From Macrostomum lignano (taxonomy: Eukaryota), in the NCBI GenBank assembly GCA_002269645.1, contig NIVC01003161.1, forward strand, positions 14,743 to 78,742: a stretch of DNA of 64,000 nucleotides, given 5' to 3'. Positions 1,627 through 62,035 of the stretch are shown here, one piece after another. The first letter of the stretch is position 1. Every line of letters starts with the position of its first letter. The position numbers and the translations under genes are program-made. The notes beneath the pieces are model-generated. The model worked only from the letters and a program-made list of their open reading frames with translations. It ran no database searches and was not told where the DNA came from.

Positions 1627-19560
<17,934 letters not shown>

Positions 19561-22950: not shown

Positions 22951-23535
<585 letters not shown>

Positions 23536-33085: not shown

Positions 33086-34361
33086 AGTAAGTCAGCCAAA
33101 AGTTTCCGGAATTTTTTAGAATCGAACTTTTAGTTAATTTTTGTCTATGGAAAAGCTTAAAAGCAGCAACCATCTACTATGCTGTTGGCCAGCCTTATCA
33201 TCACTCTTTAGCTTAACATTGCTCAGTTTCCCAGACCCTGCCTACTTAAGCCAGCAAGCGCATCCAATGGAACTGCCAAGAACTGAATGGCGAGCAATTC
33301 TGCTCAACCACTTTCATGCGGGACGCAACGCAGCAGAAGCACATCGCGAGTTGTTGCAGCTGATGGGCCCACATGCACCCTCCAAGTCGTCGGTGTACGA
33401 CTGGTTCTCTTGCTTTGCTGAGGAGAACTATGAGCTGAAGGACAAGCCGAGGTCAGGCCGACCCCCTGCTGCTGATGGCGATGCCGTTCTCCAAGCCCTT
33501 GAGGACAATCCGGACTACAGCGTGCGCAAGCTGTCAGCCGCTACTGGGGTGTCCTATGGCACGGTCCGGCGGAGCCTGCATGCTGCAGACAAGGTGCCGA
33601 AGAAGCCAACTCTGGTGCCCCATGAGCTGACACCTCAGCAGCTGAGAGCCAGGGTGAATGTGGCAACTTCGAATCTTCGCCAGGCCGGTTCGCCAAACTT
33701 TCTCAAGTCGATAATCGCTCAAGACGAGAAGTGGGTCTGCTATGAGAACCCAAGCACATCAGCCGTCTGGGTCGATGCTTCTGAAGAACCACCCAGCTGC
33801 CCAATGCGGAACCCCCACTGCGGCAAGGAGCTGCTCTCTTTCTGGTTCTGTTCGTCTGGCCCTGTTTTCTGGGAGGTCATCCCGCATGGCATGGCTGTGA
33901 ACGCGGAGGTGATCTGCAGCGAACTGGAGCAGGTCGCCCGTTTGCTGCGATCCGTGTGCCCGGGACACCGCGACAAGGTGCTCCTCTTCGACAATGCGCG
34001 GCCTCACAAAGCAAGACTCACCCAGGCCAAGCTGGCAAGCCTGGGCTTCAGTGTTTTGCCCCACCCACCATACTCGCCAGACCTCTCGCCATGCGACTAC
34101 CATGTGTTCAGGTCTCTCCAGAGCTTTTGTGATGGACAGCGGTTCGCCAACAAGCAACATGTGGAGCAGGCAGTGCAGAAATGGATTGATTCAAAGCCTG
34201 CGAGCTTCTGGAGGGAGGGGATTGACGCATTGCCAGCAAGATGGGAGAGGGTCAAGGCCTTGAATGGCAACTACATCACATCGCTGTAAACTGTTTGTTC
34301 TTGACACTATTTGTTATAGTTTTAAAATGTTCAAATTCCGGAAACTTTTGGCTCACCCTAA
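33086..34361 (+). mobile_element. Full-length mariner (DD34D) transposon, about 1276 bp
   Basis: The inner 21 bp of the TIRs are perfect (AGCCAAAAGTTTCCGGAATTT at 33094-33114, reverse complement at 34333-34353); TA flanks at 33084-85 and 34362-63; the outer 8 bp differ between the ends. Confidence 0.92.
33267..34289 (+). CDS. Mariner transposase, 340 aa, uninterrupted
   Basis: HTH N-terminus (DKPRSGRP), LVPHEL, QDEKW, FDNARPH and YSPDLSPCDY; 34 residues between the second and third catalytic Asp. Confidence 0.95.
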   Translation: MELPRTEWRAILLNHFHAGRNAAEAHRELLQLMGPHAPSKSSVYDWFSCFAEENYELKDKPRSGRPPAADGDAVLQALEDNPDYSVRKLSAATGVSYGTVRRSLHAADKVPKKPTLVPHELTPQQLRARVNVATSNLRQAGSPNFLKSIIAQDEKWVCYENPSTSAVWVDASEEPPSCPMRNPHCGKELLSFWFCSSGPVFWEVIPHGMAVNAEVICSELEQVARLLRSVCPGHRDKVLLFDNARPHKARLTQAKLASLGFSVLPHPPYSPDLSPCDYHVFRSLQSFCDGQRFANKQHVEQAVQKWIDSKPASFWREGIDALPARWERVKALNGNYITSL

Positions 34362-46789: not shown

Positions 46790-46846
<57 letters not shown>

Positions 46847-46847
46847 G

Positions 46848-46922
<75 letters not shown>

Positions 46923-46977
46923 GTGTCTGTGTGTCTGTTTGTCTGTCTGTCTGTGTCTGTCTGTCTGTCTGTCTGTG

Positions 46978-47016
<39 letters not shown>

Positions 47017-47045
47017 GTGTCTGTCTGTCTGTCTGTCTGTCTGTG

Positions 47046-47076
<31 letters not shown>

Positions 47077-47135
47077 GTGTCTGTGTGTCTGTTTGTCTGT
47101 CTGTCTGTGTCTGTCTGTCTGTCTGTCTGTCTGTG

Positions 47136-47224
<89 letters not shown>

Positions 47225-47239
47225 GTCTGTGTGTCTGTG

Positions 47240-47278
<39 letters not shown>

Positions 47279-47360
47279 TTGTCTGTCTGTTTGTCTGTCT
47301 GTCTGTTTGTCTGTCTGTCTATTTGTCTGTCTGTCTGTCTGTCTGTTTTAGTTTCTGTCA

Positions 47361-47402
<42 letters not shown>

Positions 47403-47418
47403 TTTAGTTTCTGTCAGT

Positions 47419-47466
<48 letters not shown>

Positions 47467-48033
47467 TTTAGTTTCTGTCAGTCTGTCTGTCTGTTTTAGT
47501 GTCTGTCAGTCTATCCACCTCCAATGGTCCCGCAGGCCGCAGCGAGTGCCTCCGCCAGCTGGAGCAGCTGTACCACAGTCTGGAAGACGCCGATCGGGTC
47601 TGCCTGCTGCGGCCCCGCTGGCCCCGCGGCCACGCTCTCCGTGGCGAGGCCCTGCTAGCCGGCGTCAGCCAGCCGAGGCTCTGGCAGCTTTTCGCGAAGC
47701 GGCCCGTCTCGATCCCGGCGACGAGCTGCTGCTCGATCGGGCGCGTCGTTCAGTGGAAGAGATTCGCAGCGAAGCGTCAGCAACCAGCCGGCTGATGAGG
47801 CGGTCAGTTCTGCTGGCTGCCGGAGTGGCGCTGCTGCTGGCTCTGCTGGATTTGGCGGCGCTGGAAGGCCGTCTGCACTCGCTGCTGCCAGCGTGGCTGT
47901 TATACAGCCTGGCCTACTGTCTGTCATTTTGCTGCTGTTTCGGCATTGGCTGGGCGTACAGATGGCTGCTACGACAGCATAAGCGAGACCTGTTAAAAAA
48001 ACCCATTGATTTGTTGGAGCACCTCAAGCAGAG

Positions 48034-49074: not shown

Positions 49075-49390
49075 GTCGAAACTTAGCCTAGGCGGAGGGT
49101 CCAATCCGGCTCAGCCAATGAGAGAGCAGTAAGGAGAGATGTGAAAGTCAGAGGACGTAACTCAGCCTAGGCGGCAGGTCCAATCCAGCTCAGCCAATGA
49201 GAGAGCAGTAAGGAGAGATGTGAAAGTCAGACGGACGAAACTCAGCTTAGGCCAGGCCCAAATAATCTAATTCAGCCAATGAGAGAACAGTAAGGAGAGA
49301 GGTCAAAGTCAGACACAAGCGGGCAAGAGAAAAGCCAAACTGTTTATTGACCTGAGCTTGCTGGGACTTTGGGAGTTGAGGCGCCGTCTC
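49075..49390 (+). repeat. Dispersed element with ~79-bp tandem units each containing CAGCCAATGAG (3 units + unique tail)
   Basis: Homologous, including the tail AAGCCAAACTGTTTAT...GAGGCGCC, to 61510-62035 in inverted orientation. Confidence 0.8.
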
Positions 49391-49773
49391 ACCTCTTGCA
49401 CACGCACTGGATTTTTCCAGTTTCCCTGCAATCAAGACGAAGGAAATCTAGATGAAGATGAATATGCTAATTAAACGGATCTGCTTGTAGAAAGCCAGAG
49501 TCGATTGTCGCAGCGTCGAAGACGAAACAAATTGTAAAATTTGTTAGTCTTAATTTTACAAATTTGTAAGGGGAAAGCTCAATAAACTAGTAAAAAGAGA
49601 ACATTATTTTAAGAGTAACTATAGAGTAACATCGAGCTGTTGTTCTACGAGTAGTAACTGCAGGTTTACCATAGATAAACTTAATCGATAAAATATCGAT
49701 TTTATTGCAGCACTTATCACTACTGCAAGTATTAAAACTATCAAATTTTTCGTTTAAATTCACAGCGACCAAG

Positions 49774-51640
49774 ATGCAGCAACACATCAGCCTGTCTGAC
49801 TGGGATTTATCCAGCGGTAAATCTGTTGTAGTAATGACCGCCACAACTCCCAGAGATCCCTACTATGGAAAATACTTCAACGAGATTTTTAACTTTCAAA
49901 TCGATTTGGGCAAGAAGATTCTGTACGATGGCGGAGATAATTTCCTTGTACTGGCTGACCCCAGCGTGGCGGACAAGTTCCGGTCTGAGTTGCCGGCCAA
50001 ATGCGTGGCCGAGTACTTAATCGATGACATCTGGGTTAGAGATTTTGCGCCCATTGGCTTGGTGCGACACGCTTGGTTTAAGTGCGTTTATCGTTAGAAA
50101 CCTCTAATTGTAAAAATCTCGCCAAGCCGTGTCAGCCTTTCAGATCCTCAATTGCTGTGCCAGCCTTTCAGCTCCTCAGTTGCTGTGCCAGCCTCTCAGA
50201 TCCTCAGTTTCTGTGCCAGCTTCCCAGATCCTCAGTTTCTGGGCCAGCGTCTCATATCCTCAGTTGCTGAGCCAGCCTCTCAGGTCATTAGTTGTTAGGC
50301 CAGCCTTTTATTGCTGAGCCATGCAGCCTCTGAAATCCTCACTTGCTGGGCCAGCCTCCCAGATCCTCAAGTTGCTCGGCCAGCCTCCCAGATCTTCAAG
50401 TTGCTCGGCCAGCCTCCCAGATTCTCAGTTGCTGGGCCAGCCTCCCAGATCCTCAGTTGCTGGGCCAGCCTCATAGATCCTCAGCTGCTGCGGGCCATTG
50501 CCGCTGCCCTCAACACAGATACCCATACAGACAAGCATTTATAAAAACCGCCACCCGCAGGTACCAGCCCAGCTACTTAAACAAGTCGGAAGCATCCAGC
50601 GTTCAGCAGCAGTTCCGCAGATTTCTCAGCCTGAACAGTCACCTCTTCGGCGACTTGCACTCAGCTGCAGCCGGAGACCCCACAGCTGCATCTCTCCGAC
50701 TCGACGGCGGAAACGTGGTAGACAATCAGCCAGCTGCAGCGCCTGCCGACTCCTTAGCCGTGGTAACTCGTCGAGTAGTTCGCGACAATCGACGTCAGCT
50801 GACTGAGGATCGCCTGATGGCTGTTTTGCGTCGTCAGCTGGATTGTCGGCGTCTGGCAGCGATCCCCGAGCCAGAGAATGACACGACAGGCCACGCCGAC
50901 GGTCTGGTGGCTTTCATTGACGAGAATCGGTTGGCTGTGCAACTGCAAACTGACGCGGGCAGCGATAGAGACGATGCTGAGAGTCGCCTGCTGATGCAGG
51001 AGCTCGCTGATCAGCTGGGCAGCGGCGTGCGGCTTGTGAAGCTGGAGGCTTCGGCACCCGTTAGACAGGTAAGAATGTGTACGAGATTCCCTCACATCCC
51101 ATCAGATCCTCAGGTTGATTCGGCATCTACCATATCTCAGTTGCTGGGCCACAGACTCCCAGATCCTCAGTTGCTGGGCGACAGACTCCCAGATCCTCAG
51201 TTGCTGGGCGACAGACTCTCAGATCCTCAGTTGCTGGGCGACAGACCCCCAGATCCTCAGTTGCTGGGCGGTGACTCCCAGATCCTCAGTTGCTGGGTGG
51301 TGACTCCCAGATCCTCAGTGGCTGGGCTCGTGTTCAAAGCAAATCCCCTTATCACTGCCAATCCAACTGTTGAATCCATCAGACCTGGCGTGGATTCGAC
51401 TCAGCCTGCGGCCTCCACGTCAACCTGCTGGCCACCAGGCGCAGTCTATACGTGCCGGTGTTCGGCTCGGATGAAGCCAACAGGAAGCTGGGCCAATCAG
51501 CGGAGCTGGACAGTCGAGTGCTAGTGGCAATCCGAGCGAATACAAGCAAAACAGTGGTGCCAGTTGATGTACCGAATGCGATCTGCCGGATGGGCGGCAG
51601 CGTTCGATGCCTGACTTGGGCTTTCGCGCAGTCTTTGTAG
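49774..51640 (+). CDS. Agmatine deiminase / Porphyromonas-type peptidylarginine deiminase family protein, 357 aa, 3 exons
   Basis: Exons 49774-50081, 50561-51068 and 51383-51640 total 1074 nt with no frameshift. Motifs DDIWVRDFAP, LDGGN, TTGHADG, SACGLHVN and MGGSVRCLTW carry the Asp, His-x-Asp, Asn and Cys catalytic set of this family. Confidence 0.9.
50130..50490 (+). repeat. ~27-28-bp minisatellite (CCAGCCTCCCAGATCCTCAGTTGCT core) in deiminase intron 1
   Basis: Direct, degenerate. Confidence 0.9.
51105..51320 (+). repeat. Same CCCAGATCCTCAGTTGCT minisatellite family in deiminase intron 2
   Basis: Direct. Confidence 0.9.
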
Positions 51641-51692
51641 ATAGATATTGCCATGGCGTGTACATACATGTACTATAAATGTTGAAGGACCA

Positions 51693-51915
51693 ATTAGGCG
51701 CCAAGGTCAAGATTTTAGCGCCACGGTCAAGATTTTAGCGCTTATTAGGCGCCATGGTCAAGATTTTAGCGCTAATTAGGCGCCATGGTCAAGATTTTAG
51801 CGCTAATTAGGCGCCACGGTCAAGATTTTAGCGCTAACTAGGCGCCACAGTCAAGATTTTAGCGCTAACTAGGCGCCACAGTCAAGATTTTAGCGACTAT
51901 TAGGACCCACAAACA
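51693..51915. repeat. 31-bp minisatellite (GGCGCCATGGTCAAGATTTTAGCGCTAATTA), about 7 copies, just 3' of the deiminase stop
   Basis: Direct. Confidence 0.9.
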
Positions 51916-52584
51916 AGATTTTTTACAATAAACAATAAATAACTTATTAAAACATTCCAATAATATTTCTTTGATTTCGTAAGATTTATTATGAATTATG
52001 CATTCAAATATAATATGTTAGCAATCAGGCTTCGCATAAGAATTCATAAACGAAGCTAAATATGGTCATGAAGAATCAAAATAACTAAGCTTTGAGATGG
52101 AATTGTTTTCTTTTCTCTAACAACAAATAATCAAAGCAGAAAAGACACAATTAATATTACAACGCAAACTGACAACACACGACAGGAGACAAAGGATTCA
52201 AGTCAAAACAAAGGAAACAAAAAAGCGCAGGTAAAACTTGTTCATGCCGCTTTTTTAGAAAATGTACTATTAATGACTAATAAGACAATAATTAAAGTTT
52301 ATTGGAATTCGCCTTGATGGATAATTAGTCTGAAAAATTTATGGAAGAAAGGAAAGCATTGACCACGAAATTTAGCGGCGTAAAACAATATCATTTATAA
52401 CAAAGCAGATTGAAAATCAAAAGTAAAAAATAGTTCAAACCTGTGTACACAACGAAAAATCTAATAGATCAGTTCTAATGACCGTTGGTGGATAGTCTGC
52501 TTAATTTATAGAATTTACAAGCAAAATGACAGCAAAACGGGAATTGCGAAATTTTGTTAACACTTACTGTCTAGAGGCTGCTAT

Positions 52585-52945
52585 AGCAACTGAGGATCTG
52601 GGAGGCTGGAATAGCAACTGAGAATCTGGAGGCTGACATAGCAACTGAGGATCTGGGAGGCTGGCATAGCAACTCAGGATCTGGGAGGCTGGCATAGCAA
52701 CTCAGGATCTGGGAGGCTGGCATAGCAACTCAGGATCTGGGAGGCTGGCATAGCAACTGAGAATCTGGGAGGCTGACATAGCAACTGAGGATCTGGGAGG
52801 CTGGCATAGCAACTCAGGATCTGGGAGGCTGGCATAGCAACTGAGAATCTGGGAGGCTGACATAGCAACTGAGGATCTGGGAGGCTGGCATAGCAACTGA
52901 GGATCTGGAAGGCTGGCATAGCAACTGAGGATCTGGGAGGCTGGC
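52585..52945 (-). repeat. CCCAGATCCTCAGTTGCT minisatellite family, inverted copy, intergenic
   Basis: Reads AGCAACTGAGGATCTGGGAGGCTGGC on the + strand. Confidence 0.9.
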
Positions 52946-53741
52946 AGGAAGGAAATAGGAAAAGTAATCTAATTATTATACTTTTTATGAAGGTAAAATT
53001 TATGGACAGAAAGTGAGGAATGCTTAAGCCATGAAATGAGTTTAATCAATATTCTATAATAATTTAGTGCATTATAATATGATGACAGCAAAACTTCATT
53101 GCAGCGAGTAACGAGTATCATATTGGGGATTCCTCATTAGCTCAAAATATAGTATTGATCATAAGTGGAAGAAATAAACGACACAACTGTAACAATATAT
53201 CAATCAATATGTAGTAGATTTACGTGTGTGAGAAGGCACAGCATAACAGTAAACACTAATTTAGATCAATTATATCAGGTCTGACAATTAAAATCACTGG
53301 AACGAAAAATGTCAACAAGAAAAGAAAAACTTCAACCATAAGAAATTGGGAAACTGATTATCAATATTAAATATACTAATAATAATACAGCACCAGACGG
53401 CACAACAGAAAATATTATAAATTTTCACTTATAATATTACTAAGACTTCAATTAATGCAGGGCTGTACTAAAATAAAGTAATCACAATTAGTTCAATAAT
53501 AATAGCGTTAACACGAACAATGACTATTTTAAACTTTTGATAAGCTTATCTATCTAGGGGATTATAATTACTAAATTAACAATAACTTACAGTTATTAAT
53601 TACGCAATCAATCATTTGTATCAACTAATTTACAATAAAAAACCCCGACACAAAGACAGACAAATAAGAAATCGCAAATAAATCAGCCCTAGTTGCTACA
53701 CGCTACTCGTGCTAAGCAGTAGTAGTAATAGCAGTGAGTGA

Positions 53742-56700
53742 CTATTTCTTAGACGCGGCGGCAGCGATGCCAGAGCACAGGTCGCGATGCAGCACGCTGC
53801 CCAGAGTCATCTGTTCGCAGTGGACTCTCAGCAGATTGGCCTGCCGATCCAACGCCACGTAGACTGGAATTGGCCGACTGGCACAGGACCGGCCGGCGAA
53901 CCACAGCTGTCCGGTTGGGGCGCCGGACACTGCCACCAGATTGGCGCTGGATCGGACAGCTTCGGCCAGGTCCGAGTCGCTTAGCTGGCTGGCGGCTTCG
54001 GGTAGGCGGCCTAAAGAAGGACACGGTGTACTATTGCAGCTCAATTTAGGTCTATATGTACTTTTGTAGACTAATCAGGGACACATGTACTTTTTTATGA
54101 TACAAAAACGTGTAATTTTTAGCAGGATTAAAACAATATGCACTTTTGAAGACTAATTAAAAAAAATATTTTGCAGCCTAATTAAGGACAGTACATGTAC
54201 GAAGTATGTACCTTTGTAGCATAATTTAGGTCCATATGTACTTTTGTGAGACTAATCAGGGACACGTACTTTTTTAGCACAATACAACATGTGTACTTGT
54301 GTTACCCCATGAAGGACAATAAGTACTTTTGTATGAAAAAAACCGTGTACTTTTTAGCCTGATTTAAACAATATGCACTTTTGAGGACTAATTAAAACAA
54401 TTTTTTTGCAGCCCATTAAGGACAGTATATGTATGTACTTTTGTAGCATAATTAAGATTAGTATGTACTTTTGTAGCCGAATTTAGGACAACCTGTACTC
54501 TCGTAGCGCATTACAAGAAGCATATGTACTTATAGCTAAATAAATTGAAGACTTAGTGTACTTTTGTATTTTAGTTAAGAACAATATGTACTTGACCATT
54601 TAAGGATTATAAAAATCAATCTACTAATCTACCTTTCTCCTCATTAAGTCCTTTTAGCTTGCCAGACTCGGCAGTAAACTGCTGAGCAGACATAGTAACC
54701 GGGGCCAGCAGTTCCCCAACCGGAGGCTGGACGCTAGCCCGAATCTCCTGGGCGCCATTGTCCCAGCGCAGTAACAGCTGACAGGCTGTGGTTGAGTCGC
54801 CCCAGGCCACTTCAGCCTGTCGGGTGGTATTAACGCCAGGCTCCAGGGTGTCAATGGGTTCCGGCGGTTGCAGAGCCGGTCCGGCGGCGTGCTGCAGGGT
54901 CACGTGACGCATCGCGGCGCTGCTGTGATTGGTGAAGACTAGGCTAAGAGCGATTCGACCGCTGGCTAGGCAGGTGCGAGGGAAGGAGTAGTCCACCTGG
55001 GGGATTAGATGGGGCATAAGTGTTATATTATGTAATTCGCTTTTACAAGCTCACTCAATTTATATACAGGTTAGTAGTCGATGTAGCCTGTCAATAAGAA
55101 CCCATTTTGAGCTTCAATTAGACGTTAATTAGGGGAAAAAATAATTATTAGGCGACAATTAGAAGCCAAATTGGGCGACAATTAGAAGCGAAATTAAGCG
55201 CCAATTAGAAGTCAAATTAAGCGACAATTAGAAGCCAATTTAGGGACAATTAGAAGCCAAATTAAGTGACAATTAGAAGCCAATTCAGGGACAATTAGAA
55301 GCCAAATTAAGTGACAATTAGAAGCGAATTTAGGGACAATTAAAAGCCAATTCAGGGACAATTAGATGCAAAATTAAACGACAATAAGAAGTCAAATTAA
55401 GCGACAATTAGAAGCCAATTTAGGGACAATTAGAAGCCAAATTAAGTGACAATTAGAAGCCAATTCAGGGACAATTAGAAGCCAAATTAAGTGACAATTA
55501 GAAGCCAATTTAGGGACAATTAAAAGCCAATTCAGGGACAATTAGATGCAAAATTAAACGACAATAAGAAGTCAAATTAAGCGACAATTAGAAGCTAAAT
55601 TAAGTGACAATTAGATGTTAAATTAAGCGAGAATTATAAGTCAAATAAATCGTCAATTAGAAGCTAAATTAAGCGATAATTAGAAGCCAAATTAAGCGCC
55701 AATTAGAAGCCAAATCGAGCCAAAATTAGAACCTAAATTAAGCGACAATTAGAATTCAAATTAGGCGACAATTAGAAGGCCAAATTAAGCACCATTTGGA
55801 AAGCTAAATTAAACGCTAAATAGAAGCCAAATAAATCGTCAATTAGAAGCCAAATTAAGCATTAATTAGAAGCCAAATTAGGCGCTAATTAAAAGACAAA
55901 TTAAGCACCTTTTAGAAGCCAAATTAGGCATTTTTTTAAACCAAATTAGGCGCCAATTATTAGCCGTTTTTTCTAAAGACAAAAGAAAAAGAAACAATAC
56001 GTATATACGCACCTGCAAGCCAGAAGCGCTGTACTTATTAACCAGACTGTACATCCTGCTAGGCGTGGGCAGAAGCAGCAGATCATCCGGCATCAGACCG
56101 AACGGATCAACTGGCCGACTGGTAGACTTCGACGGAGCAGCTGGGGCAGCGGTTGGATTAGTCGGGCCGAAATCTAACAGGCTGGCTTCCGCCGGCTGTT
56201 GCTGCTTCTGCTTGGATTTCTGCTCTTTCGGCTTGACAGTCACGGCTGGTTTTGCATTTTGTTGCTGCTTAGTTTTAGGCGGCGCCGCCACTGAAGAGTC
56301 TGATGAGTCTTCTTCTTCTTCATCTGAATCTTCATCTTCGTCTGAGTCGTTTTCTTCTTCTTCAGAAGATTCCTGCGTCTTCACGGGCTTTTTCTGCTGA
56401 ACGATCGGCTTCTTTTTAGTATTCTCTTCCTCGCTGGAATCCTCTTCTTCATCATCATCTTCCTCTTCTTCTTCTTCTTCATCTTCATCTTCCTCCTCAT
56501 CTTCTTCATCATCTTCCTCATCTTCGTCTTCATCTTCTGATTCGTCTGAGCTGCCGGAAATCCTGTCGACGCCGCCGCGAGAATAAGCGGCCATAGACGA
56601 TGGCGCCGGAGCGGGCGCGGCCACAGCCCGAACGCTCGAATCCGGCTGCTCAGCAGGCCAGTCTGGCAGAGCCTGGTAGCCCGGCAGTCGGAGATTAAGC

Positions 56701-59700
56701 AGGTGCGACAGGCTGCCCAGCTGGAATGGCGACTTTTCGGCGAATCTAGACTGAACCTCCGGAGCGGGCTTCGGCGCTAATAGTATCTTCTTCACTCGCT
56801 TGCCGGCTAGCAGTGTCGGTTCAGCGACGCTCGGATCCGGCAGGACTAGCGGGCGTAGGAATCTGCTGCGATCGCGGATGTCGTAGTTCTGATCGTATTT
56901 GGCCAGGTTCAGCACGTACTGGGCTAGCAGACGGGCCTGCTTGGGATTGCACACACACAGCTTGGCGGCCAGGTTCACGATCTGCAGCTTCACCTGCGGC
57001 GATGAAGCGGTATGCTAATCTTGAGGATCAGGTAAGGTTTTCCCAGCAACTGACACTCTGGGAGGCCGTGGCCCAGCAAATCAGGATCTGGGAGGCTGGC
57101 GGCCCGGCAACTGAGGATCTGGGAGGCTGGCGGCCCGGCAACTGAGGATCTGGGAGGCTGGCGGCCCGGCAACTGAGGATCTGGGAGGCTGGCGGCCCGG
57201 CAACTGAGGATCTGGGAAGCTGGCCCAGCAACTCAGGGTCTGGGAGGCTGGCCCAGCAACTCAGGATCTGGGAGACTGGCATAGCAACTGACACTCTGCA
57301 TGGGAGGCTGTTCCAGCAACTGACACTATGGGAGGCTGGCCCAGCAACTGACACTCTGGGAGGCTGGCCCAGCAACTGACACTCTGGGAGGCTGGCCCAG
57401 CAACTGAGGATCTGGGAGGCTGGCTCAGCAACTAAGGATATGGGTAACTGAGTGACAAACCCTCACCTGGTCCTCCTCCTCCAAGAATGACTTGGCAAAC
57501 TTGCGCAGCACGTCAGGCGCAATCTTCGGTATGCGATCGCAGTACTCGCCAATCAGCCACAGAATAGAGGCCCTGGCCCTAGGTATGGCGATGCCATCAA
57601 CCAGCCTGGCGAGGTCAACAATCATGTGACTGTGATCGCTTGTTTGCACCTGTAGTAGTTTCTTAATTACTACTATAGCCTCAGCAACAACAGATTCGTC
57701 TTTTTTAGCCAGCAGACTGACAAGGTTATTCAGGCAGGTGTCGGTGGTGTCGGGCAGCTGGGAGGCGCATCGACCGATGGCGCGTACAGCGGCGCTTGCC
57801 AGTTCAGAGTCTGGCGACGATACGTAGGCTTGCAGTTCGCGGAGCAGAACCTACAGTATGTGAACGAATAATGGGATTGAAATAGCCATTCATGAGCTTA
57901 CAGGGCCAATGTAAAAACCAGTCACCAAGGTCTAGAAGGTACATGTACAGGGTACACCCTGTGCGAGCGAGAGTTCTTAATGGCTCATTGGGTCTGCGAA
58001 GTGGAATGGCTCTTAAGTCGCCAAGGCTTATAAGAGGAGAATTGCTACTGAGATCCCAAGGCTTAAAAAACACATCAAATAGAACTAACTCTTTACAGAC
58101 TATTATTATGTTTGTAAGCTTTGATCCCCCAAAGGGGGCTTCGTGCGCTAGTCCACATACTAAGTTGATAAAAGTCTAATTACTGTCAATTAGACAATAA
58201 AACTCACCGGAAAATTAGAATCGGTAGCCAGATTAGTAAGAATATCCAGTTTCACCAATTTCACACTACTCGAGTCGGTGCTATGAATGTAGAAACACTT
58301 CAAATGACCGGATAGCAGATGCGGCGAACTGGCCGACAGGGCCGACAGACTGGTCAGTACGCAGCTTTGCACTTCGGGCGAGGCGCGTAACAAGCGAACT
58401 AGATGACGGATTACAATATTCATGTAGCCGGGAGGGGCGCAGTGGTAATACAGCTGGGCTACAGCCATCACTACAGCCGCGTTCTGGCTTTGGAATAGCG
58501 GTCGAACTGTCCGCAGTAGCAGCTCGTGATCCGGGTCTAGCGGGTTTTGCCTCTCCTGCTTTTGGTTCTGCTGGGCTGGATCTAGGAACTGCGTGCGGAC
58601 GTACCTGGATTGGGACAGGGTGGGGACAGATGGATAGATAGGTAGATAGAGCAACAGTATCCACGTTGGGGTAGAATGAGGGTAGACACTGGGGTAGAGT
58701 GAGAGAGTAGACACAGTGGGGTAGAGTGAGAGTAGACACAGTGGGGTAGAGTGAGAGTAGGCACAGTGGGGTAGAGTGAGAGTAGACACAGTGAGGACGA
58801 GGTAAAGTGAGATAGTAGTAGACACACTGGGTAGAGAGAGTAGACAGAGAAGTAGAGTGAGATAAGAGTAGGCACTATGGGGTAAGAGTGAGAGAGTAGA
58901 CAAAGTGAGGTAGAGTGAGGGAGTAAACACAGTAGGGTAGAGTGAGAGACTAGACACAGTGGGGTAGAGTGGATAGTAGACACAGTGAGGTAAAGTGAGA
59001 TAGTAGTAGACACACTGGGTAGAGAGAGAGAGTAGACAGTGAAGTAGAGTGAGATAAGAGTAGGCACTATGGGGTAAGAGTGAGAGAGTAGACACAATGG
59101 GGTAGAGGGAGAGTAGAAGAAGTGATAGTGAGATGGTTTGCACAGCAGCAGGGGGCTCACCTAGTCAGCATATTGATAATGACAACCTGTCCCCAGTCTT
59201 GCACATCGGCTAGCAGTTCGCACAACTTCCTATAATTCTTGTGAATCAAATCGATTCGATTCGGACAAATCTCTTCAAAAGCTTGTATAGCAACGCCAAC
59301 AACTAGTGTGGTTTTATCGGCTAGCAGTTTCTCAATAACGCCCATTAACTGTGGCTTAGTCTCTGGGTCTAGGCTATAGATTTTCGGTATGGCCAATGCG
59401 GCAGTTTTACGAACGTAGGCTGACATATCGGACACAGCGTCTTGCAGAGCGAGAGTCTGTATTGGCAGGATCACGGGCACTCGAATACTAGTTAAGACTC
59501 GAAGAGCGCTAGCCCTAATCAGCTGATTAGGATCTTTCAAAGCGCGCTGGAATGTAGCAATAGACAGCAAAGCCAAGTCTTGCTGCTCCTCGGCGTAGCG
59601 AGTCAAGTAAACGTAAACCAATTTTTTCACTTCCGAATTTTTCGATACGACATTTTTAACAACAGACGGAAACAAATCCGAGCAATCTTTGCCCTTAGCA

Positions 59701-59945
59701 ACCATAGCTATGATTCTGCGCATAGCTTCGAGTTTCTGCGAATCTTTGCTAGACTCTAACATCGCTCTTAGGTCGTCGTGCTTTTTGAAATCGCCGGAGA
59801 AGAACGCGGAGCCAGCTGGATCAGCGGCGCTACTCCGGGTGCCTCGGTCGCCATCCTGACTGCCCGTTGATGAGGCGTGATCTGGCGGGGGCAGGCCCAG
59901 CTGGTCCATGGGCGAATTGTAGGGTTGGAAACCGCCGTTGCTCAT
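53742..59945 (-). CDS. AP3B1: AP-3 adaptor complex subunit beta, complete, about 1059 aa, 6 exons
   Basis: Exons 59161-59945, 58208-58604, 57467-57850, 56013-56993, 54633-54996 and 53742-54010 are all phase-consistent (3180 nt). Signature sequences: [58 protein letters not shown] and [12 protein letters not shown], an acidic hinge, and a C-terminal ear domain. Confidence 0.97.
54050..54600. repeat. Degenerate ~30-bp ATGTACTTTTGTAG-type array in AP3B intron 5
   Basis: Recurrent ATGTACTTTT motif. Confidence 0.7.
55150..55960. repeat. 22-23-bp minisatellite (ACAATTAGAAGCCAAATTAAGCG) in AP3B intron 4
   Basis: Direct. Confidence 0.92.
57025..57432 (-). repeat. CCCAGATCCTCAGTTGCT minisatellite family in AP3B intron 3
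   Basis: Direct; same sense orientation relative to transcription as in the deiminase introns. Confidence 0.9.
58640..59110. repeat. ~25-27-bp purine-rich minisatellite (GAGTAGACACAGTGGGGTAGAGTGA) in AP3B intron 1
   Basis: Direct, degenerate. Confidence 0.85.
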
Positions 59946-61509: not shown

Positions 61510-62035
61510 GATTGGCGCCTCTTCCCTCCAGCCAGGCCGATAAACAGTTTGGCTTACCTTTTGCCTGCTTGTCTGAGTTTTTCCCCTCCTTACTGCGCTC
61601 TCATTGGCTGAGCCAGATCGGGCCTGTCCCCTAGACTGAGTTTCGTCTGTCTGATTTTGCCCTCTCTCCTTACTGCTCTCTTATTGGCTGAGCCAGATCG
61701 GGCCTGTCCCCTAGACTGAGTTTCGTCTGTCTGATTTTTCCCTCTCTCCTTACTGCTCTCTTATTGGCTGAGCCAGATCGGGCCTGTCCCCTAGACTGAG
61801 TTTCGTCTGTCTGATTTTGCCCTCTCTCCTTACTGCTGCTCTCATTGGCTGAGCCAGATCGGGCCTGTCCCCTAGACTGAGTTTCGTCTGTCTGATTTTG
61901 CCCTCTCTCCTTACTGCTCTCTTATTGGCTGAGCCAGATCGGGCCTGTCCCCTAGACTGAGTTTCGTCTGTCTGATTTTGCCCTCACTCCTTACTGCTCT
62001 CATTGGCTGAGCCAGATTGGGCCAGATCAGCCAGA
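61510..62035 (-). repeat. Dispersed element with ~80-bp CCAAT-containing tandem units (about 5.5 copies)
   Basis: Period 80 (CTAGACTGAG at 61631 and 61711); homologous to 49075-49390. Confidence 0.88.

What the first reader, a model, noticed from the sequence alone, without database searches (positions are those of the whole stretch)
49774..51640. Intact, spliced bacterial-type agmatine/peptidylarginine deiminase in an animal genome
Seen: three phase-consistent exons give 357 aa with DIWVRD, GGN, GHADG, HVN and GGSVRC. Known: these correspond to the Asp / His-x-Asp / Asn / Cys catalytic set of agmatine deiminases and Porphyromonas PPAD (PAD_porph family). The family is typical of bacteria and plants, is not part of canonical animal polyamine metabolism, and is structurally distinct from vertebrate Ca-dependent PADIs. 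Inference: a domesticated, possibly horizontally acquired, enzyme. It could provide an agmatine-to-N-carbamoylputrescine route or an invertebrate protein citrullination system. Spliceosomal introns and flanking animal genes argue against contamination.
Basis: partly seen in the sequence, partly recalled or inferred. Interest (0 to 1): 0.75.

Follow-up and report, generated by a model that had tools for sequence, protein, structure and literature searches.

The report
Flatworm deiminase gene of bacterial type
The flatworm Macrostomum lignano carries an intact, spliced and transcribed gene for a guanidino-group deiminase of a mostly bacterial family; it is already in GenBank, is neither a true agmatine deiminase ortholog nor a Porphyromonas-type PAD, and sits in an old animal clade shared with nematodes rather than being a recent acquisition.

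Summary

The window is Macrostomum lignano or a sibling species. Two GenBank scaffolds carry collinear copies of the gene, 98-99% identical in protein. Their transcriptome-derived gene models use the same two splice junctions.

The protein is a single-domain PF04371 member (69.9 bits). Its predicted fold is a pentein propeller closest to agmatine deiminases (TM 0.64-0.71, 13-18% identity). The Cys/His/Asp catalytic set and all agmatine-contacting residues of plant AIH are conserved. It fails the AguA equivalog model (16.5 vs 381.8 bits) and lacks PPAD and PADI architecture. It belongs to an uncharacterised, mostly prokaryotic subfamily found in 380 GTDB species, all ≤36% identical to it.

An 11+1-residue insertion groups it with three nematode lineages, with unidentified intronless marine eukaryote sequences (44-46% identity), and with one plasmid-like bacterial contig. 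Any transfer from bacteria is therefore ancient and its direction is unresolved. Intron positions are not shared with the nematode or coral homologs.

The substrate is unproven; agmatine or a similar small guanidino amine is most likely. Interest is moderate.

The parts
49764..49765 (+). Probable spliced-leader trans-splice acceptor (AG after the tract ttttcgtttaaattcac). The mature mRNA would start at about 49766, leaving 8 nt of 5'UTR.
   Evidence: This is an inference. The GenBank CDS of the paralogous copy (P0420) is marked 'partial' and begins TK-MQQ, 6 nt before the ATG, although the frame stays open upstream to 49705. The gene is named 'g4' of transcriptional unit Mlig000004, and such units were cut at mapped trans-splice sites (PMC5730564).
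49774..50081 (+). Exon 1: ATG to codon 103 (phase 2). It encodes the DIWVRD motif (Asp85, Trp87, Arg89, Asp90).
   Evidence: same junction in P0420
50082..50560 (+). Intron 1 (479 nt, GT..AG). 358 nt of it is a 28-bp minisatellite at 50133-50490.
50561..51068 (+). Exon 2: encodes DGGN (151-154), Arg174, and D210-TTG-H214-A-D216.
51069..51382 (+). Intron 2 (314 nt, GT..AG, phase 0). 192 nt of it is a 30-bp variant of the same minisatellite at 51136-51327.
51383..51640 (+). Exon 3: encodes HVN (Asn286), the clade-specific insertion (aa 300-310 plus Asn337), GGSVRC with the catalytic Cys348, and the TAG stop at 51638-51640.
51641..51950 (+). Probable 3'UTR, with a 31-bp x 6.6 tandem array (51718-51922) and poly(A) signals AATAAA at 51927 and 51934 and ATTAAA at 51946.
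   Evidence: The extent is inferred; no read data were available.
54616..59945 (-). Context: AP-3 complex beta subunit gene, convergent with the deiminase gene. It shows that the locus is animal DNA.
   Evidence: Adaptin_N, Cnd1 and AP3B1_C Pfam hits. 70-81% identity to AP-3 beta of many metazoans. The same neighbour is present at both M. lignano paralogous loci.

Best explanation
The gene encodes a cytosolic, single-domain, cysteine-dependent guanidino-group deiminase (pentein fold, PF04371).

By homology, Cys348 attacks the guanidinium carbon of the substrate, which is held by Asp90 and Asp216. His214 protonates the leaving ammonia. Water then hydrolyses the S-alkylthiouronium intermediate to a ureido (N-carbamoyl) product.

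Every residue that contacts agmatine in plant agmatine iminohydrolase is identical here. The most likely substrate is therefore agmatine or a very similar small guanidino amine, giving N-carbamoylputrescine plus NH3.

The protein is not an AguA ortholog. It belongs to a distinct, uncharacterised subfamily with the signature DIWxRD...DGGN...TGHxDG...VN...GGSVRC. About 40% of the subfamily proteins retrieved (most of them prokaryotic) have an N-terminal hydrophobic stretch, which suggests export.

Within that subfamily the flatworm gene lies in an indel-defined clade made almost entirely of eukaryotic sequences: nematodes and unidentified marine eukaryotes. If the gene came from bacteria, this happened long before Macrostomum arose. 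The two introns, rich in minisatellite, were gained later.

What is shown: the gene structure, family membership, fold, residue conservation, transcript-based models, multi-copy synteny and phyletic pattern. What is inferred: catalytic activity, substrate, cytosolic location, trans-splicing, and the direction and age of any transfer.
For: Gene model and motifs. PF04371 at 69.9 bits against a cutoff of 25. AlphaFold model with pLDDT 91.3 and pTM 0.92. The best Foldseek matches are all agmatine deiminases (C. jejuni, A. thaliana, M. truncatula, H. pylori, E. faecalis), with TM 0.64-0.71 and probability 1.0.

Profile alignment to PDB chains places D85/D90, H214/D216 and C348 on the DxWxRD, GHxD and catalytic Cys motifs of H. 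pylori and E. faecalis AgD. MtAIH contacts agmatine through Asp89, Trp91, Asp94, Asp220, His224, Asp226 and Cys366 (PMC6447857). These correspond to window D85, W87, D90, D210, H214, D216 and C348, all identical.

All 17 subfamily signature columns are at consensus (DWRDGGNRDHDNTGGRC), as in 193 of 202 full-length members for the Cys column. The crude scan found no N-terminal hydrophobic stretch.

The transcript-derived GenBank models P0420 and P0279 use the same two junctions. Between homeologous copies the exons are 4-10 times less diverged than flanks and introns (0.65% vs 2.6% and 6%; Fisher p=0.004 and 7e-12).

Clade evidence: in the NJ trees the window groups with P0001/P0002 (bootstrap 65-69) and with Plectus and P0237 (73 in the first tree, but only 25 in the second, larger tree). 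The 11+1-aa insertion is shared only with Plectus, Romanomermis, Aphelenchus, contigs that look eukaryotic, and one bacterial contig; it is absent from all 80 GTDB loci.
Against: The curated agmatine deiminase equivalog TIGR03380 scores only 16.5 bits against a cutoff of 381.8. Sequence identity to any solved agmatine deiminase is 13-18%. The AgD motifs EGGS and HC are replaced by DGGN and RC. Arg174 and Arg347 are subfamily-specific near-invariant residues of unknown role.

No polyamine-pathway partner (N-carbamoylputrescine amidase or putrescine carbamoyltransferase) lies next to the gene, either in the window or in 80 prokaryotic loci. No member of the subfamily has been characterised, as far as the literature searches show.

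Among the three recent copies, 9 of 12 substitutions are nonsynonymous, which equals the neutral expectation. One copy carries a frameshift and another has G276R at a conserved Gly. Tree support for the clade is moderate and comes from NJ only.
Confidence: 0.55

Rival explanations
1. The fold and chemistry are the same, but the physiological substrate is another free guanidino compound that carries an anionic group. Candidates are L-arginine, guanidinoacetate, 3-guanidinopropionate, 4-guanidinobutyrate, and taurocyamine- or lombricine-type invertebrate phosphagen precursors. The enzyme would then serve nitrogen salvage or catabolism rather than putrescine synthesis.
For: The subfamily is far from AguA. 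It has its own near-invariant arginines, R174 and R347, where agmatine deiminases have E/Q and H. About 40% of family members have N-terminal hydrophobic stretches or lipoboxes, which suggests action on extracellular compounds. The subfamily occurs in ammonia-oxidising Nitrosopumilaceae and many environmental heterotrophs, with no linked polyamine genes.
Against: All residues that bind the amine end of agmatine in plant AIH are conserved, including the acidic D210 four residues before His214.
Confidence: 0.2
2. It is a peptidyl-arginine deiminase that citrullinates proteins or peptide C-termini. This would be an invertebrate citrullination system independent of PADIs.
For: It belongs to the same Pfam family as PPAD. 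Foldseek matches PPAD structures with TM about 0.62 and E of 1e-10 to 1e-11. The catalytic residues are shared.
Against: All agmatine deiminase structures match better than PPAD (E of 1e-15 to 1e-17, against 1e-10 to 1e-11 for PPAD). The protein is a bare 357-aa catalytic domain with no IgSF or C-terminal domain and no signal peptide. A conserved acidic, Trp-lined narrow channel is typical of small-amine substrates.
Confidence: 0.07
3. The copies are functionally decaying remnants. After the recent genome duplication in M. lignano they evolve neutrally, and the protein no longer has a selected function.
For: Over the three copies there are 3 synonymous and 9 nonsynonymous substitutions, matching the neutral expectation. 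L090 has a 1-nt deletion in exon 1. L085 has G276R at a Gly that is invariant among the seven sequences of alignment A2. Nematode relatives include clear pseudoenzymes with Cys348 replaced by Ser and His214 lost.
Against: The window copy keeps an open frame, both splice sites and all 17 signature residues. Exons are 4-10 times more conserved than flanks and introns. Transcripts exist. The catalytic set has been kept at 39-46% overall identity to Plectus and the marine relatives. The frameshift may be a long-read assembly error. Twelve substitutions give no statistical power.
Confidence: 0.1
4. It is a recent horizontal acquisition specific to Macrostomum, or bacterial contamination of the assembly.
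For: The family is overwhelmingly prokaryotic: 380 GTDB species loci. It is missing from most named animal proteomes among the hits.
Against: No prokaryotic sequence exceeds 36% identity. The closest relatives are eukaryotic. The gene has two spliceosomal introns, GC3 and codon usage near those of the neighbouring AP-3 beta gene (GC3 0.62 vs 0.54; RSCU r=0.52), and the same synteny at three homeologous loci.
Confidence: 0.02

Closest known systems
Agmatine deiminase / agmatine iminohydrolase (AguA, AIH; EC 3.5.3.12; e.g. PDB 6B10, 3H7K, 6NIB, 3HVM, 2JER)
   Same: Same Pfam family and pentein fold, and these are the best structural matches. The Cys/His/Asp triad, the second guanidinium-binding Asp, the channel Trp and the acidic residue four positions before His are all conserved. 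It is a single-domain protein of about 350 aa.
   Different: Sequence identity is only 13-18%. It fails the TIGR03380 and NF010070 curated models by more than 350 bits. It has DGGN and RC where AgDs have EGGS and HC. No N-carbamoylputrescine amidase or putrescine carbamoyltransferase is linked in any genome examined. Activity is untested.
Porphyromonas gingivalis peptidylarginine deiminase (PPAD; PDB 4YT9, 5AK7)
   Same: Same Pfam family (which is named after PPAD) and the same catalytic residues. The fold match has TM about 0.62.
   Different: PPAD is a secreted multi-domain protein: catalytic domain, IgSF domain and type IX secretion C-terminal domain (this architecture is from general knowledge). 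It is specific for C-terminal Arg. The flatworm protein is a bare catalytic domain with no signal peptide, and it is structurally nearer to agmatine deiminases.
Vertebrate Ca-dependent PADIs (PF03068, PAD_N, PAD_M), acquired by animals from cyanobacteria (PMC8826395)
   Same: Same guanidino-modifying superfamily. PADIs are also a precedent for a deiminase entering animals from bacteria.
   Different: There is no Pfam match to any PADI domain. hPAD4 is only a weak structural match (TMq 0.50, E 2.5e-4). That paper treats pPAD-type proteins as a phyletically distinct group.
GenBank PAA91538.1 / PAA82243.1 (Macrostomum lignano BOX15_Mlig000004g4 and BOX15_Mlig025637g2; UniProt A0A267G880, 'Agmatine deiminase')
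   Same: These are homeologous copies of this very gene: 98-99% protein identity, the same exon junctions and the same AP-3 beta neighbour.
   Different: The window copy differs at 6-7 coding positions. It lacks the exon-1 frameshift seen in the NIVC01000484 copy and the G276R change seen in the NIVC01000084 copy.
Nematode homologs (Plectus sambesii A0A914XFY3; Romanomermis culicivorax A0A915JB91; Aphelenchus avenae KAH7729845.1)
   Same: They share the 11+1-residue insertion before the last strand and group with the flatworm sequence.
   Different: Identity is 39% or less. The Romanomermis and Aphelenchus proteins have lost Cys348 and His214 and are pseudoenzymes; the Romanomermis protein begins with a hydrophobic, signal-like stretch. 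Intron positions are not shared.

Membership tests
Pfam PF04371 (PAD_porph; agmatine deiminase / PPAD family of the pentein guanidino-modifying superfamily) | Score above the family's gathering threshold | tested here: met
   69.9 bits against a cutoff of 25, E 2.8e-19, aa 58-351 on profile positions 49-318 of 321
Pfam PF04371 (PAD_porph) | Five-bladed alpha/beta pentein propeller fold | tested here: met
   AlphaFold model with pLDDT 91.3 and pTM 0.92. The top 30 Foldseek PDB matches are all agmatine deiminases or PPAD, each with probability 1.0.
Pfam PF04371 (PAD_porph) | Catalytic Cys, His and Asp plus a second guanidinium-binding Asp | tested here: met
   C348, H214, D216 and D90 align to the catalytic motifs of H. 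pylori and E. faecalis AgD and to MtAIH Cys366, His224, Asp226 and Asp94
Agmatine deiminase AguA/AIH (EC 3.5.3.12) | Match to the curated equivalog model TIGR03380 (or NF010070) above its cutoff | tested here: not met
   16.5 bits vs 381.8, and 15.1 bits vs 483
Agmatine deiminase AguA/AIH (EC 3.5.3.12) | Residues that contact agmatine in solved complexes (MtAIH Asp89, Trp91, Asp94, Asp220, His224, Asp226, Cys366) | tested here: met
   The window has identical residues at D85, W87, D90, D210, H214, D216 and C348, by sequence alignment. The three-dimensional pocket geometry was not inspected.
Agmatine deiminase AguA/AIH (EC 3.5.3.12) | Pathway context: linked or co-occurring N-carbamoylputrescine amidase or putrescine carbamoyltransferase | tested here: inconclusive
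   None is found in the 64-kb window or as a conserved neighbour in 80 prokaryotic loci. The rest of the flatworm genome could not be searched.
Agmatine deiminase AguA/AIH (EC 3.5.3.12) | Hydrolysis of agmatine to N-carbamoylputrescine plus NH3 | not testable with these tools
   Needs an enzyme assay.
PPAD-type peptidylarginine deiminase | Secreted multi-domain architecture: signal peptide, catalytic domain, IgSF domain and C-terminal sorting domain | tested here: not met
   The protein is 357 aa with a single Pfam domain and no N-terminal hydrophobic stretch. The PPAD architecture itself is taken from general knowledge and from the PDB chain lengths of 420-438 aa.
PPAD-type peptidylarginine deiminase | Citrullination of peptidyl (C-terminal) arginine | not testable with these tools
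   Needs an enzyme assay.
Vertebrate-type PADI | PAD (PF03068), PAD_M and PAD_N domains | tested here: not met
   No such Pfam hit at E<=1. hPAD4 is only a weak fold match.
Horizontally acquired bacterial gene in an animal | Physically integrated in the animal genome and expressed | tested here: met
   AP-3 beta lies about 2-3 kb downstream. Three collinear loci exist. The gene has spliceosomal introns, and the GenBank models are transcriptome-derived.
Horizontally acquired bacterial gene in an animal | Nested with support inside a prokaryotic clade, with an identifiable donor | tested here: inconclusive
   The subfamily is mostly prokaryotic. However, the gene's immediate clade is eukaryotic apart from one plasmid-like gammaproteobacterial contig (P0280) and a partial Albibeggiatoa sequence. 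Bootstrap support is 33-58% and the trees are NJ only.
Horizontally acquired bacterial gene in an animal | Patchy distribution among animals that vertical descent does not explain | tested here: inconclusive
   Named animal hits come only from Macrostomum, three nematode genera, an octocoral and a bdelloid rotifer, in at least three separate clades.

The most novel reading that the evidence does not exclude
The indel-defined animal clade could be a previously unrecognised metazoan enzyme family. Its members are the flatworm, nematodes of three orders, and abundant unidentified marine eukaryotes. Its real substrate may not be agmatine. It could be peptidyl-arginine, which would give protostomes a PADI-independent citrullination system, or an invertebrate guanidino metabolite. 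The nematode derivatives with Cys replaced by Ser, some of which begin with signal-like hydrophobic stretches, would then be guanidino- or arginine-binding pseudoenzymes.
Probability: 0.1. Interest if true: 0.75.

Novelty: new member of a known kind. Interest (0 to 1): 0.4.

Why it matters
Animals are generally said to lack the agmatine deiminase route, and protein citrullination outside vertebrates is an open question. An active PF04371 deiminase in a genetically tractable flatworm, where RNAi and transgenesis are established, would allow direct tests. One test is whether some invertebrates make putrescine or salvage nitrogen from agmatine-like compounds. Another is what this large, uncharacterised and often exported bacterial subfamily does. 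The shared-indel clade with nematodes, including catalytically dead paralogs, is also a clean case for studying ancient inter-domain transfer, later intron gain and pseudoenzyme evolution. The gene itself, however, is already deposited and carries an automatic name.

Tried and rejected
- The alternative exon-1 donor at 50075 (355 aa) was rejected, because homologs and the GenBank model read FKYQPSYL.
- Rfam and tRNA scans of the window, run to identify the organism, found nothing. The organism was instead identified through the exhaustive protein search.
- Gene-neighbourhood analysis of 80 prokaryotic loci, looking for functional partners, found only within-genus synteny (Acinetobacter, Saprospiraceae) and no polyamine genes.
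- A metagenome-contig scan with a clade-specific alignment found nothing above 36% identity and no new clade members.
- Literature searches for this family in animals, flatworms and nematodes found no paper on it.
- The dN/dS comparison between the homeologous copies rests on too few substitutions (12) to be informative.
- Shared intron positions were tested as evidence of vertical descent. The nearest Aphelenchus intron is 2 codons away in the same phase, and the Dendronephthya intron is about 3 codons away in a different phase. None is identical.
- Many long ORFs elsewhere in the window are artefacts of micro- and minisatellites.
- Pocket geometry in the AlphaFold model could not be inspected, because coordinates are not exposed.
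Full report
**1. The observation.**
Reading the sequence and testing splice combinations gives one frame-consistent model. Exon 1 is 49774-50081, exon 2 is 50561-51068 and exon 3 is 51383-51640, all on the + strand. The boundaries are TTAA|gtgcgt...ccgcag|GTAC (phase 2) and ACAG|gtaaga...atcag|ACCT (phase 0).

Unspliced, exon 1 runs into a stop at 50097. A second in-frame donor at 50075 is excluded, because homologs and the deposited gene model read FKYQPSYL across the junction. Similarity to homologs stops exactly at the exon borders, and there is no second copy in the window.

**2. The organism, and the fact that the gene is already deposited.**
The downstream, convergent gene (54616-59945, - strand) is AP-3 complex beta. 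It is 70-81% identical to orthologs from vertebrates, molluscs, rotifers, insects and nematodes, so this is animal DNA.

An exhaustive phmmer search found P0279, which is 98% identical over aa 189-357. Cluster look-up identifies it as PAA82243.1 (BOX15_Mlig025637g2; UniProt A0A267G880, auto-named 'Agmatine deiminase'). Its cluster-mate P0420 is PAA91538.1 (BOX15_Mlig000004g4). Both are from Macrostomum lignano (Platyhelminthes, Macrostomorpha).

P0420 is my 357-aa model preceded by 'TK', with 6 amino-acid differences and identical junctions. Its locus (L085; GCA_002269645.1, NIVC01000084.1) is collinear with the window, including AP-3 beta, at 93-95% non-coding identity. A third locus (L090; NIVC01000484.1) is 96.7% identical upstream and has the same neighbour. 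The window is therefore M. lignano or a sibling species, and the gene exists in at least three homeologous copies. This fits the assembly's known redundancy: 180 Mb of it lies in duplicated blocks at least 95% identical (PMC5730564).

**3. Expression and splicing.**
The GenBank annotation of this assembly is built only from RNA-seq and de novo transcript assemblies. Transcriptional units were cut at experimentally mapped trans-splice and poly(A) sites (PMC5730564). The deposited models therefore show that spliced mRNA with these two junctions exists, although reads cannot be assigned to a particular copy.

The deposited CDS is '5'-partial' and begins only 6 nt before the ATG, yet the frame is open upstream to 49705. 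The mRNA thus appears to start right after the AG at 49764-65, which follows a pyrimidine-rich tract. Together with the 'g4' name within unit Mlig000004, this suggests a spliced-leader trans-splice acceptor. This is an inference. AATAAA signals lie at 51927 and 51934.

**4. What the protein is.**
Pfam gives a single hit, PF04371 PAD_porph, at 69.9 bits against a cutoff of 25. The curated agmatine deiminase models fail by a wide margin: TIGR03380 scores 16.5 bits against 381.8, and NF010070 scores 15.1 against 483.

An AlphaFold model built on 40 homologs is confident (pLDDT 91.3, pTM 0.92). Foldseek against the PDB returns agmatine deiminases first (C. jejuni, A. thaliana, M. truncatula, H. 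pylori, E. faecalis; TM 0.64-0.71; 13-18% identity). PPAD comes next (TM about 0.62), then DDAH, arginine deiminase and hPAD4 much further away.

A profile of the subfamily aligns to PDB agmatine deiminases over nearly the whole length. The motif correspondences are:
- DIWVRD aligns with NDTWARD / NDAWVRD.
- TGHADG aligns with DSHTD / NGHVD.
- VN aligns with VN / MN.
- GGSVRC aligns with HGSLHC / GGNIHC.

For Medicago AIH, the guanidine moiety is held by Asp94, Asp226 and His224. Cys366 is the nucleophile. The amine end is held by Asp220 and, through water, by Asp89. Trp91 lines the channel (PMC6447857). The window has the identical residue at every one of these positions: D90, D216, H214, C348, D210, D85 and W87.

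The chemistry is therefore almost certainly that of a Cys-dependent deiminase, and an agmatine-like substrate is plausible. The protein also differs from agmatine deiminases. It has DGGN where they have EGGS, and Arg347 where they have a His before the Cys. Arg174 is near-invariant within the subfamily.

**5. The subfamily.**
Homologs form a coherent group with invariant D85, W87, R89, D90, G152, G153, N154, R174, H214, D216, N286, T290, G343, G344, R347 and C348. The window protein matches the consensus in all 17 signature columns checked.

The group is mainly prokaryotic, with 380 loci in GTDB species representatives. These include Anaerolineales, Saprospiraceae and Chitinophagaceae, Roseivirga, many Acinetobacter species, Nitrosopumilaceae, cyanobacteria, Verrucomicrobiota and Acidobacteriota. 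All are ≤36% identical to the flatworm protein.

About 40% of full-length members have an N-terminal hydrophobic stretch and some have lipoboxes, by a crude scan. The flatworm protein has none. No conserved neighbour beyond within-genus synteny was found, and none is a polyamine gene. I found no paper characterising any member, or discussing the family in animals.

**6. Relatives and origin.**
The closest sequences are P0001 and P0002, at 44% and 41% identity by BLASTP (up to 46% in the later alignments). They come from marine (TARA and ENA) metagenomes and sit on AT-rich, gene-sparse contigs that look eukaryotic. One contig has a Sulfotransfer_2 neighbour, and the gene is intronless there.

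The next closest are Plectus sambesii (39%) and a cDNA-like contig. NJ trees group the window with P0001/P0002 (bootstrap 65-69). The first tree groups them further with Plectus and P0237 (bootstrap 73; only 25 in the second, larger tree).

A rarer character supports the grouping: an 11-residue insertion (aa 300-310, G-x-D-x-E-N...G-Q-S) plus one extra residue before the CRMGG strand. This insertion is found in:
- the three Macrostomum copies;
- the P0001 cluster;
- Plectus;
- Romanomermis culicivorax (Enoplea);
- Aphelenchus avenae;
- two further contigs that look eukaryotic: L088, with Surp/DRY_EERY and cystatin neighbours and three tandem paralogs, and L089, with an MMACHC neighbour;
- several fragments;
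- one bacterial-looking contig (P0280 on L086).

The insertion is absent from all 80 GTDB loci. P0280 has a signal peptide, and the ParA gene on its contig is 64% identical to that of a Thiothrix plasmid. A partial Albibeggiatoa protein (P0322) has a shorter version of the insertion and is the nearest named prokaryote in the C-terminal half, but with only 33% bootstrap.

Other eukaryotic members fall elsewhere in the tree. There is an octocoral group (Dendronephthya and relatives). The bdelloid Adineta sequence lies inside a Bacteroidota/Saprospiraceae group. The diplonemid Artemidia is also separate.

Codon usage of the flatworm gene is close to that of AP-3 beta (GC3 0.62 vs 0.54; RSCU r=0.52).

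Taken together, the gene is not a recent, lineage-specific acquisition. If it is bacterial in origin, the transfer predates the divergence of the lineages in the indel clade, or else involved eukaryote-to-eukaryote spread. The single bacterial member could be either donor-like or a recipient. With NJ trees and moderate support I cannot decide among these.

**7. Introns.**
The nearest relative is intronless. Aphelenchus has seven introns and Dendronephthya has one. None coincides with the two Macrostomum introns. The nearest Aphelenchus intron is two codons downstream of intron 1, in the same phase. The Dendronephthya intron is about three codons upstream of intron 2, in a different phase and inside an insertion. 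This fits independent intron gain in a formerly intronless gene, but intron turnover in nematodes weakens the argument.

Both Macrostomum introns consist mostly of one minisatellite family (core CAGATCCTCAGTTGCTGGGC). The same family also fills an AP-3 beta intron and an intergenic block.

**8. Constraint.**
Between the window and L085, the exons differ at 7 of 1074 sites (0.65%). The flanks differ at 10 of 384 sites (2.6%), and the introns at 41 of 652 ungapped sites (6%). Fisher p values are 0.004 and 7e-12.

However, of the 12 distinct coding substitutions among the three copies, 9 are nonsynonymous, which is the neutral expectation. There is no power at this sample size. L090 has a 1-nt deletion in exon 1, which is either a real frameshift or a long-read assembly error. 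L085 has G276R at a conserved Gly. The window copy is the cleanest of the three. Long-term constraint is shown by full retention of the catalytic signature at 39-46% identity to Plectus and the marine relatives.

**9. Verdict.**
This is a genuine, expressed animal gene for a PF04371 deiminase, but it is not an AguA ortholog or a PPAD, and the horizontal-transfer reading survives only as an ancient and unresolved event.

The most likely function is hydrolysis of agmatine or a similar small guanidino amine in the cytosol (confidence about 0.55). The alternatives are another free guanidino substrate (0.2), peptidyl-arginine (0.07) and decaying duplicates (0.1).

It is a new member of a known enzyme kind, in an uncharacterised subfamily, and it is already present in public databases under an automatic name. 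Interest is moderate (0.4). Its main value is as an entry point, in a tractable flatworm, to an unstudied subfamily and to an animal clade that includes nematode pseudoenzymes.

Noticed in passing
window 50133-50490 (+), 51136-51327 (+), 52574-52946 (-), 57042-57444 (-): One 28-30-bp minisatellite family (core CAGATCCTCAGTTGCTGGGC; 36 hits against 0.01 expected) fills most of both deiminase introns, an intergenic block, and what appears to be an AP-3 beta intron. In all three intronic cases the array is in the sense orientation of the host gene. This raises the question of whether a repeat-bearing element created or expanded these introns.
   Followed up: partly
window 49077-49314 (+) and 61586-62023 (-): A 79-80-bp tandem repeat family containing a GCCAATGAGAG motif occurs in inverted orientation. 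One array lies about 0.5 kb upstream of the deiminase ATG and the other about 1.6 kb upstream of the AP-3 beta start. Each convergent gene therefore has it upstream in the same relative orientation, so it may be promoter-associated.
   Followed up: partly
window 51718-51922: A 31-bp x 6.6 tandem array (GCGCCACGGTCAAGATTTTAGCGCTAATTAG) lies inside the probable 3'UTR, just before the AATAAA signals.
   Followed up: no
L090 (NIVC01000484.1), position equivalent to window 49980; L085 (NIVC01000084.1), position equivalent to window 51392: Differences among the homeologous copies. L090 has a 1-nt deletion (CC to C) that frameshifts exon 1, and GenBank accordingly calls only a 169-aa C-terminal ORF there. 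L085 has G276R at a conserved glycine. These could reflect decay after polyploidisation or assembly error.
   Followed up: partly
P0290 (Romanomermis culicivorax), P0333 (Aphelenchus avenae; L091 3001-4802), P0328, P0289 (L089 4628-5722): Nematode and other members of the indel clade have the catalytic Cys replaced by Ser, and most have also lost the His and other active-site residues. Several begin with hydrophobic, signal-like stretches. They look like a family of deiminase-derived pseudoenzymes, possibly secreted.
   Followed up: partly
L088 1366-2391, 2871-3707, 4869-5843: An unidentified eukaryote (36.5% GC, with Surp/DRY_EERY and cystatin neighbours) carries three tandem paralogs of the indel-clade deiminase, 61-76% identical to each other. 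In copies 1 and 3 the active-site motifs read in the translations (DIWIRD, DGGN, TGHSDG, GGSVRC) are intact. Copy 2, as called, lacks the N-terminal DIWxRD region and reads EGGN and GHADE, though GGSVRC is kept.
   Followed up: partly
L086 1645-2781: This is the only bacterial-looking carrier of the animal-clade insertion. It is a signal-peptide-bearing homolog on a plasmid-like contig whose ParA is 64% identical to that of a Thiothrix plasmid. It could represent the donor lineage or a bacterium that received the gene from a eukaryote.
   Followed up: partly
window 8421-14453: A 6-kb satellite of a 26-bp unit (GGGTCAGTGACCAACAAGAGGTTGCA, about 239 copies). Large (AGAT)n and (TCTG)n microsatellites also lie at 15779-17253, 18353-18742, 22952-23535 and 46790-47512. 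These repeats produce many long spurious ORFs.
   Followed up: no
window 33141-34289 (+): An intact-looking 382-aa ORF of a mariner/Mos1-type transposase (HTH_48, Transposase_1 and DDE_3 Pfam hits).
   Followed up: no
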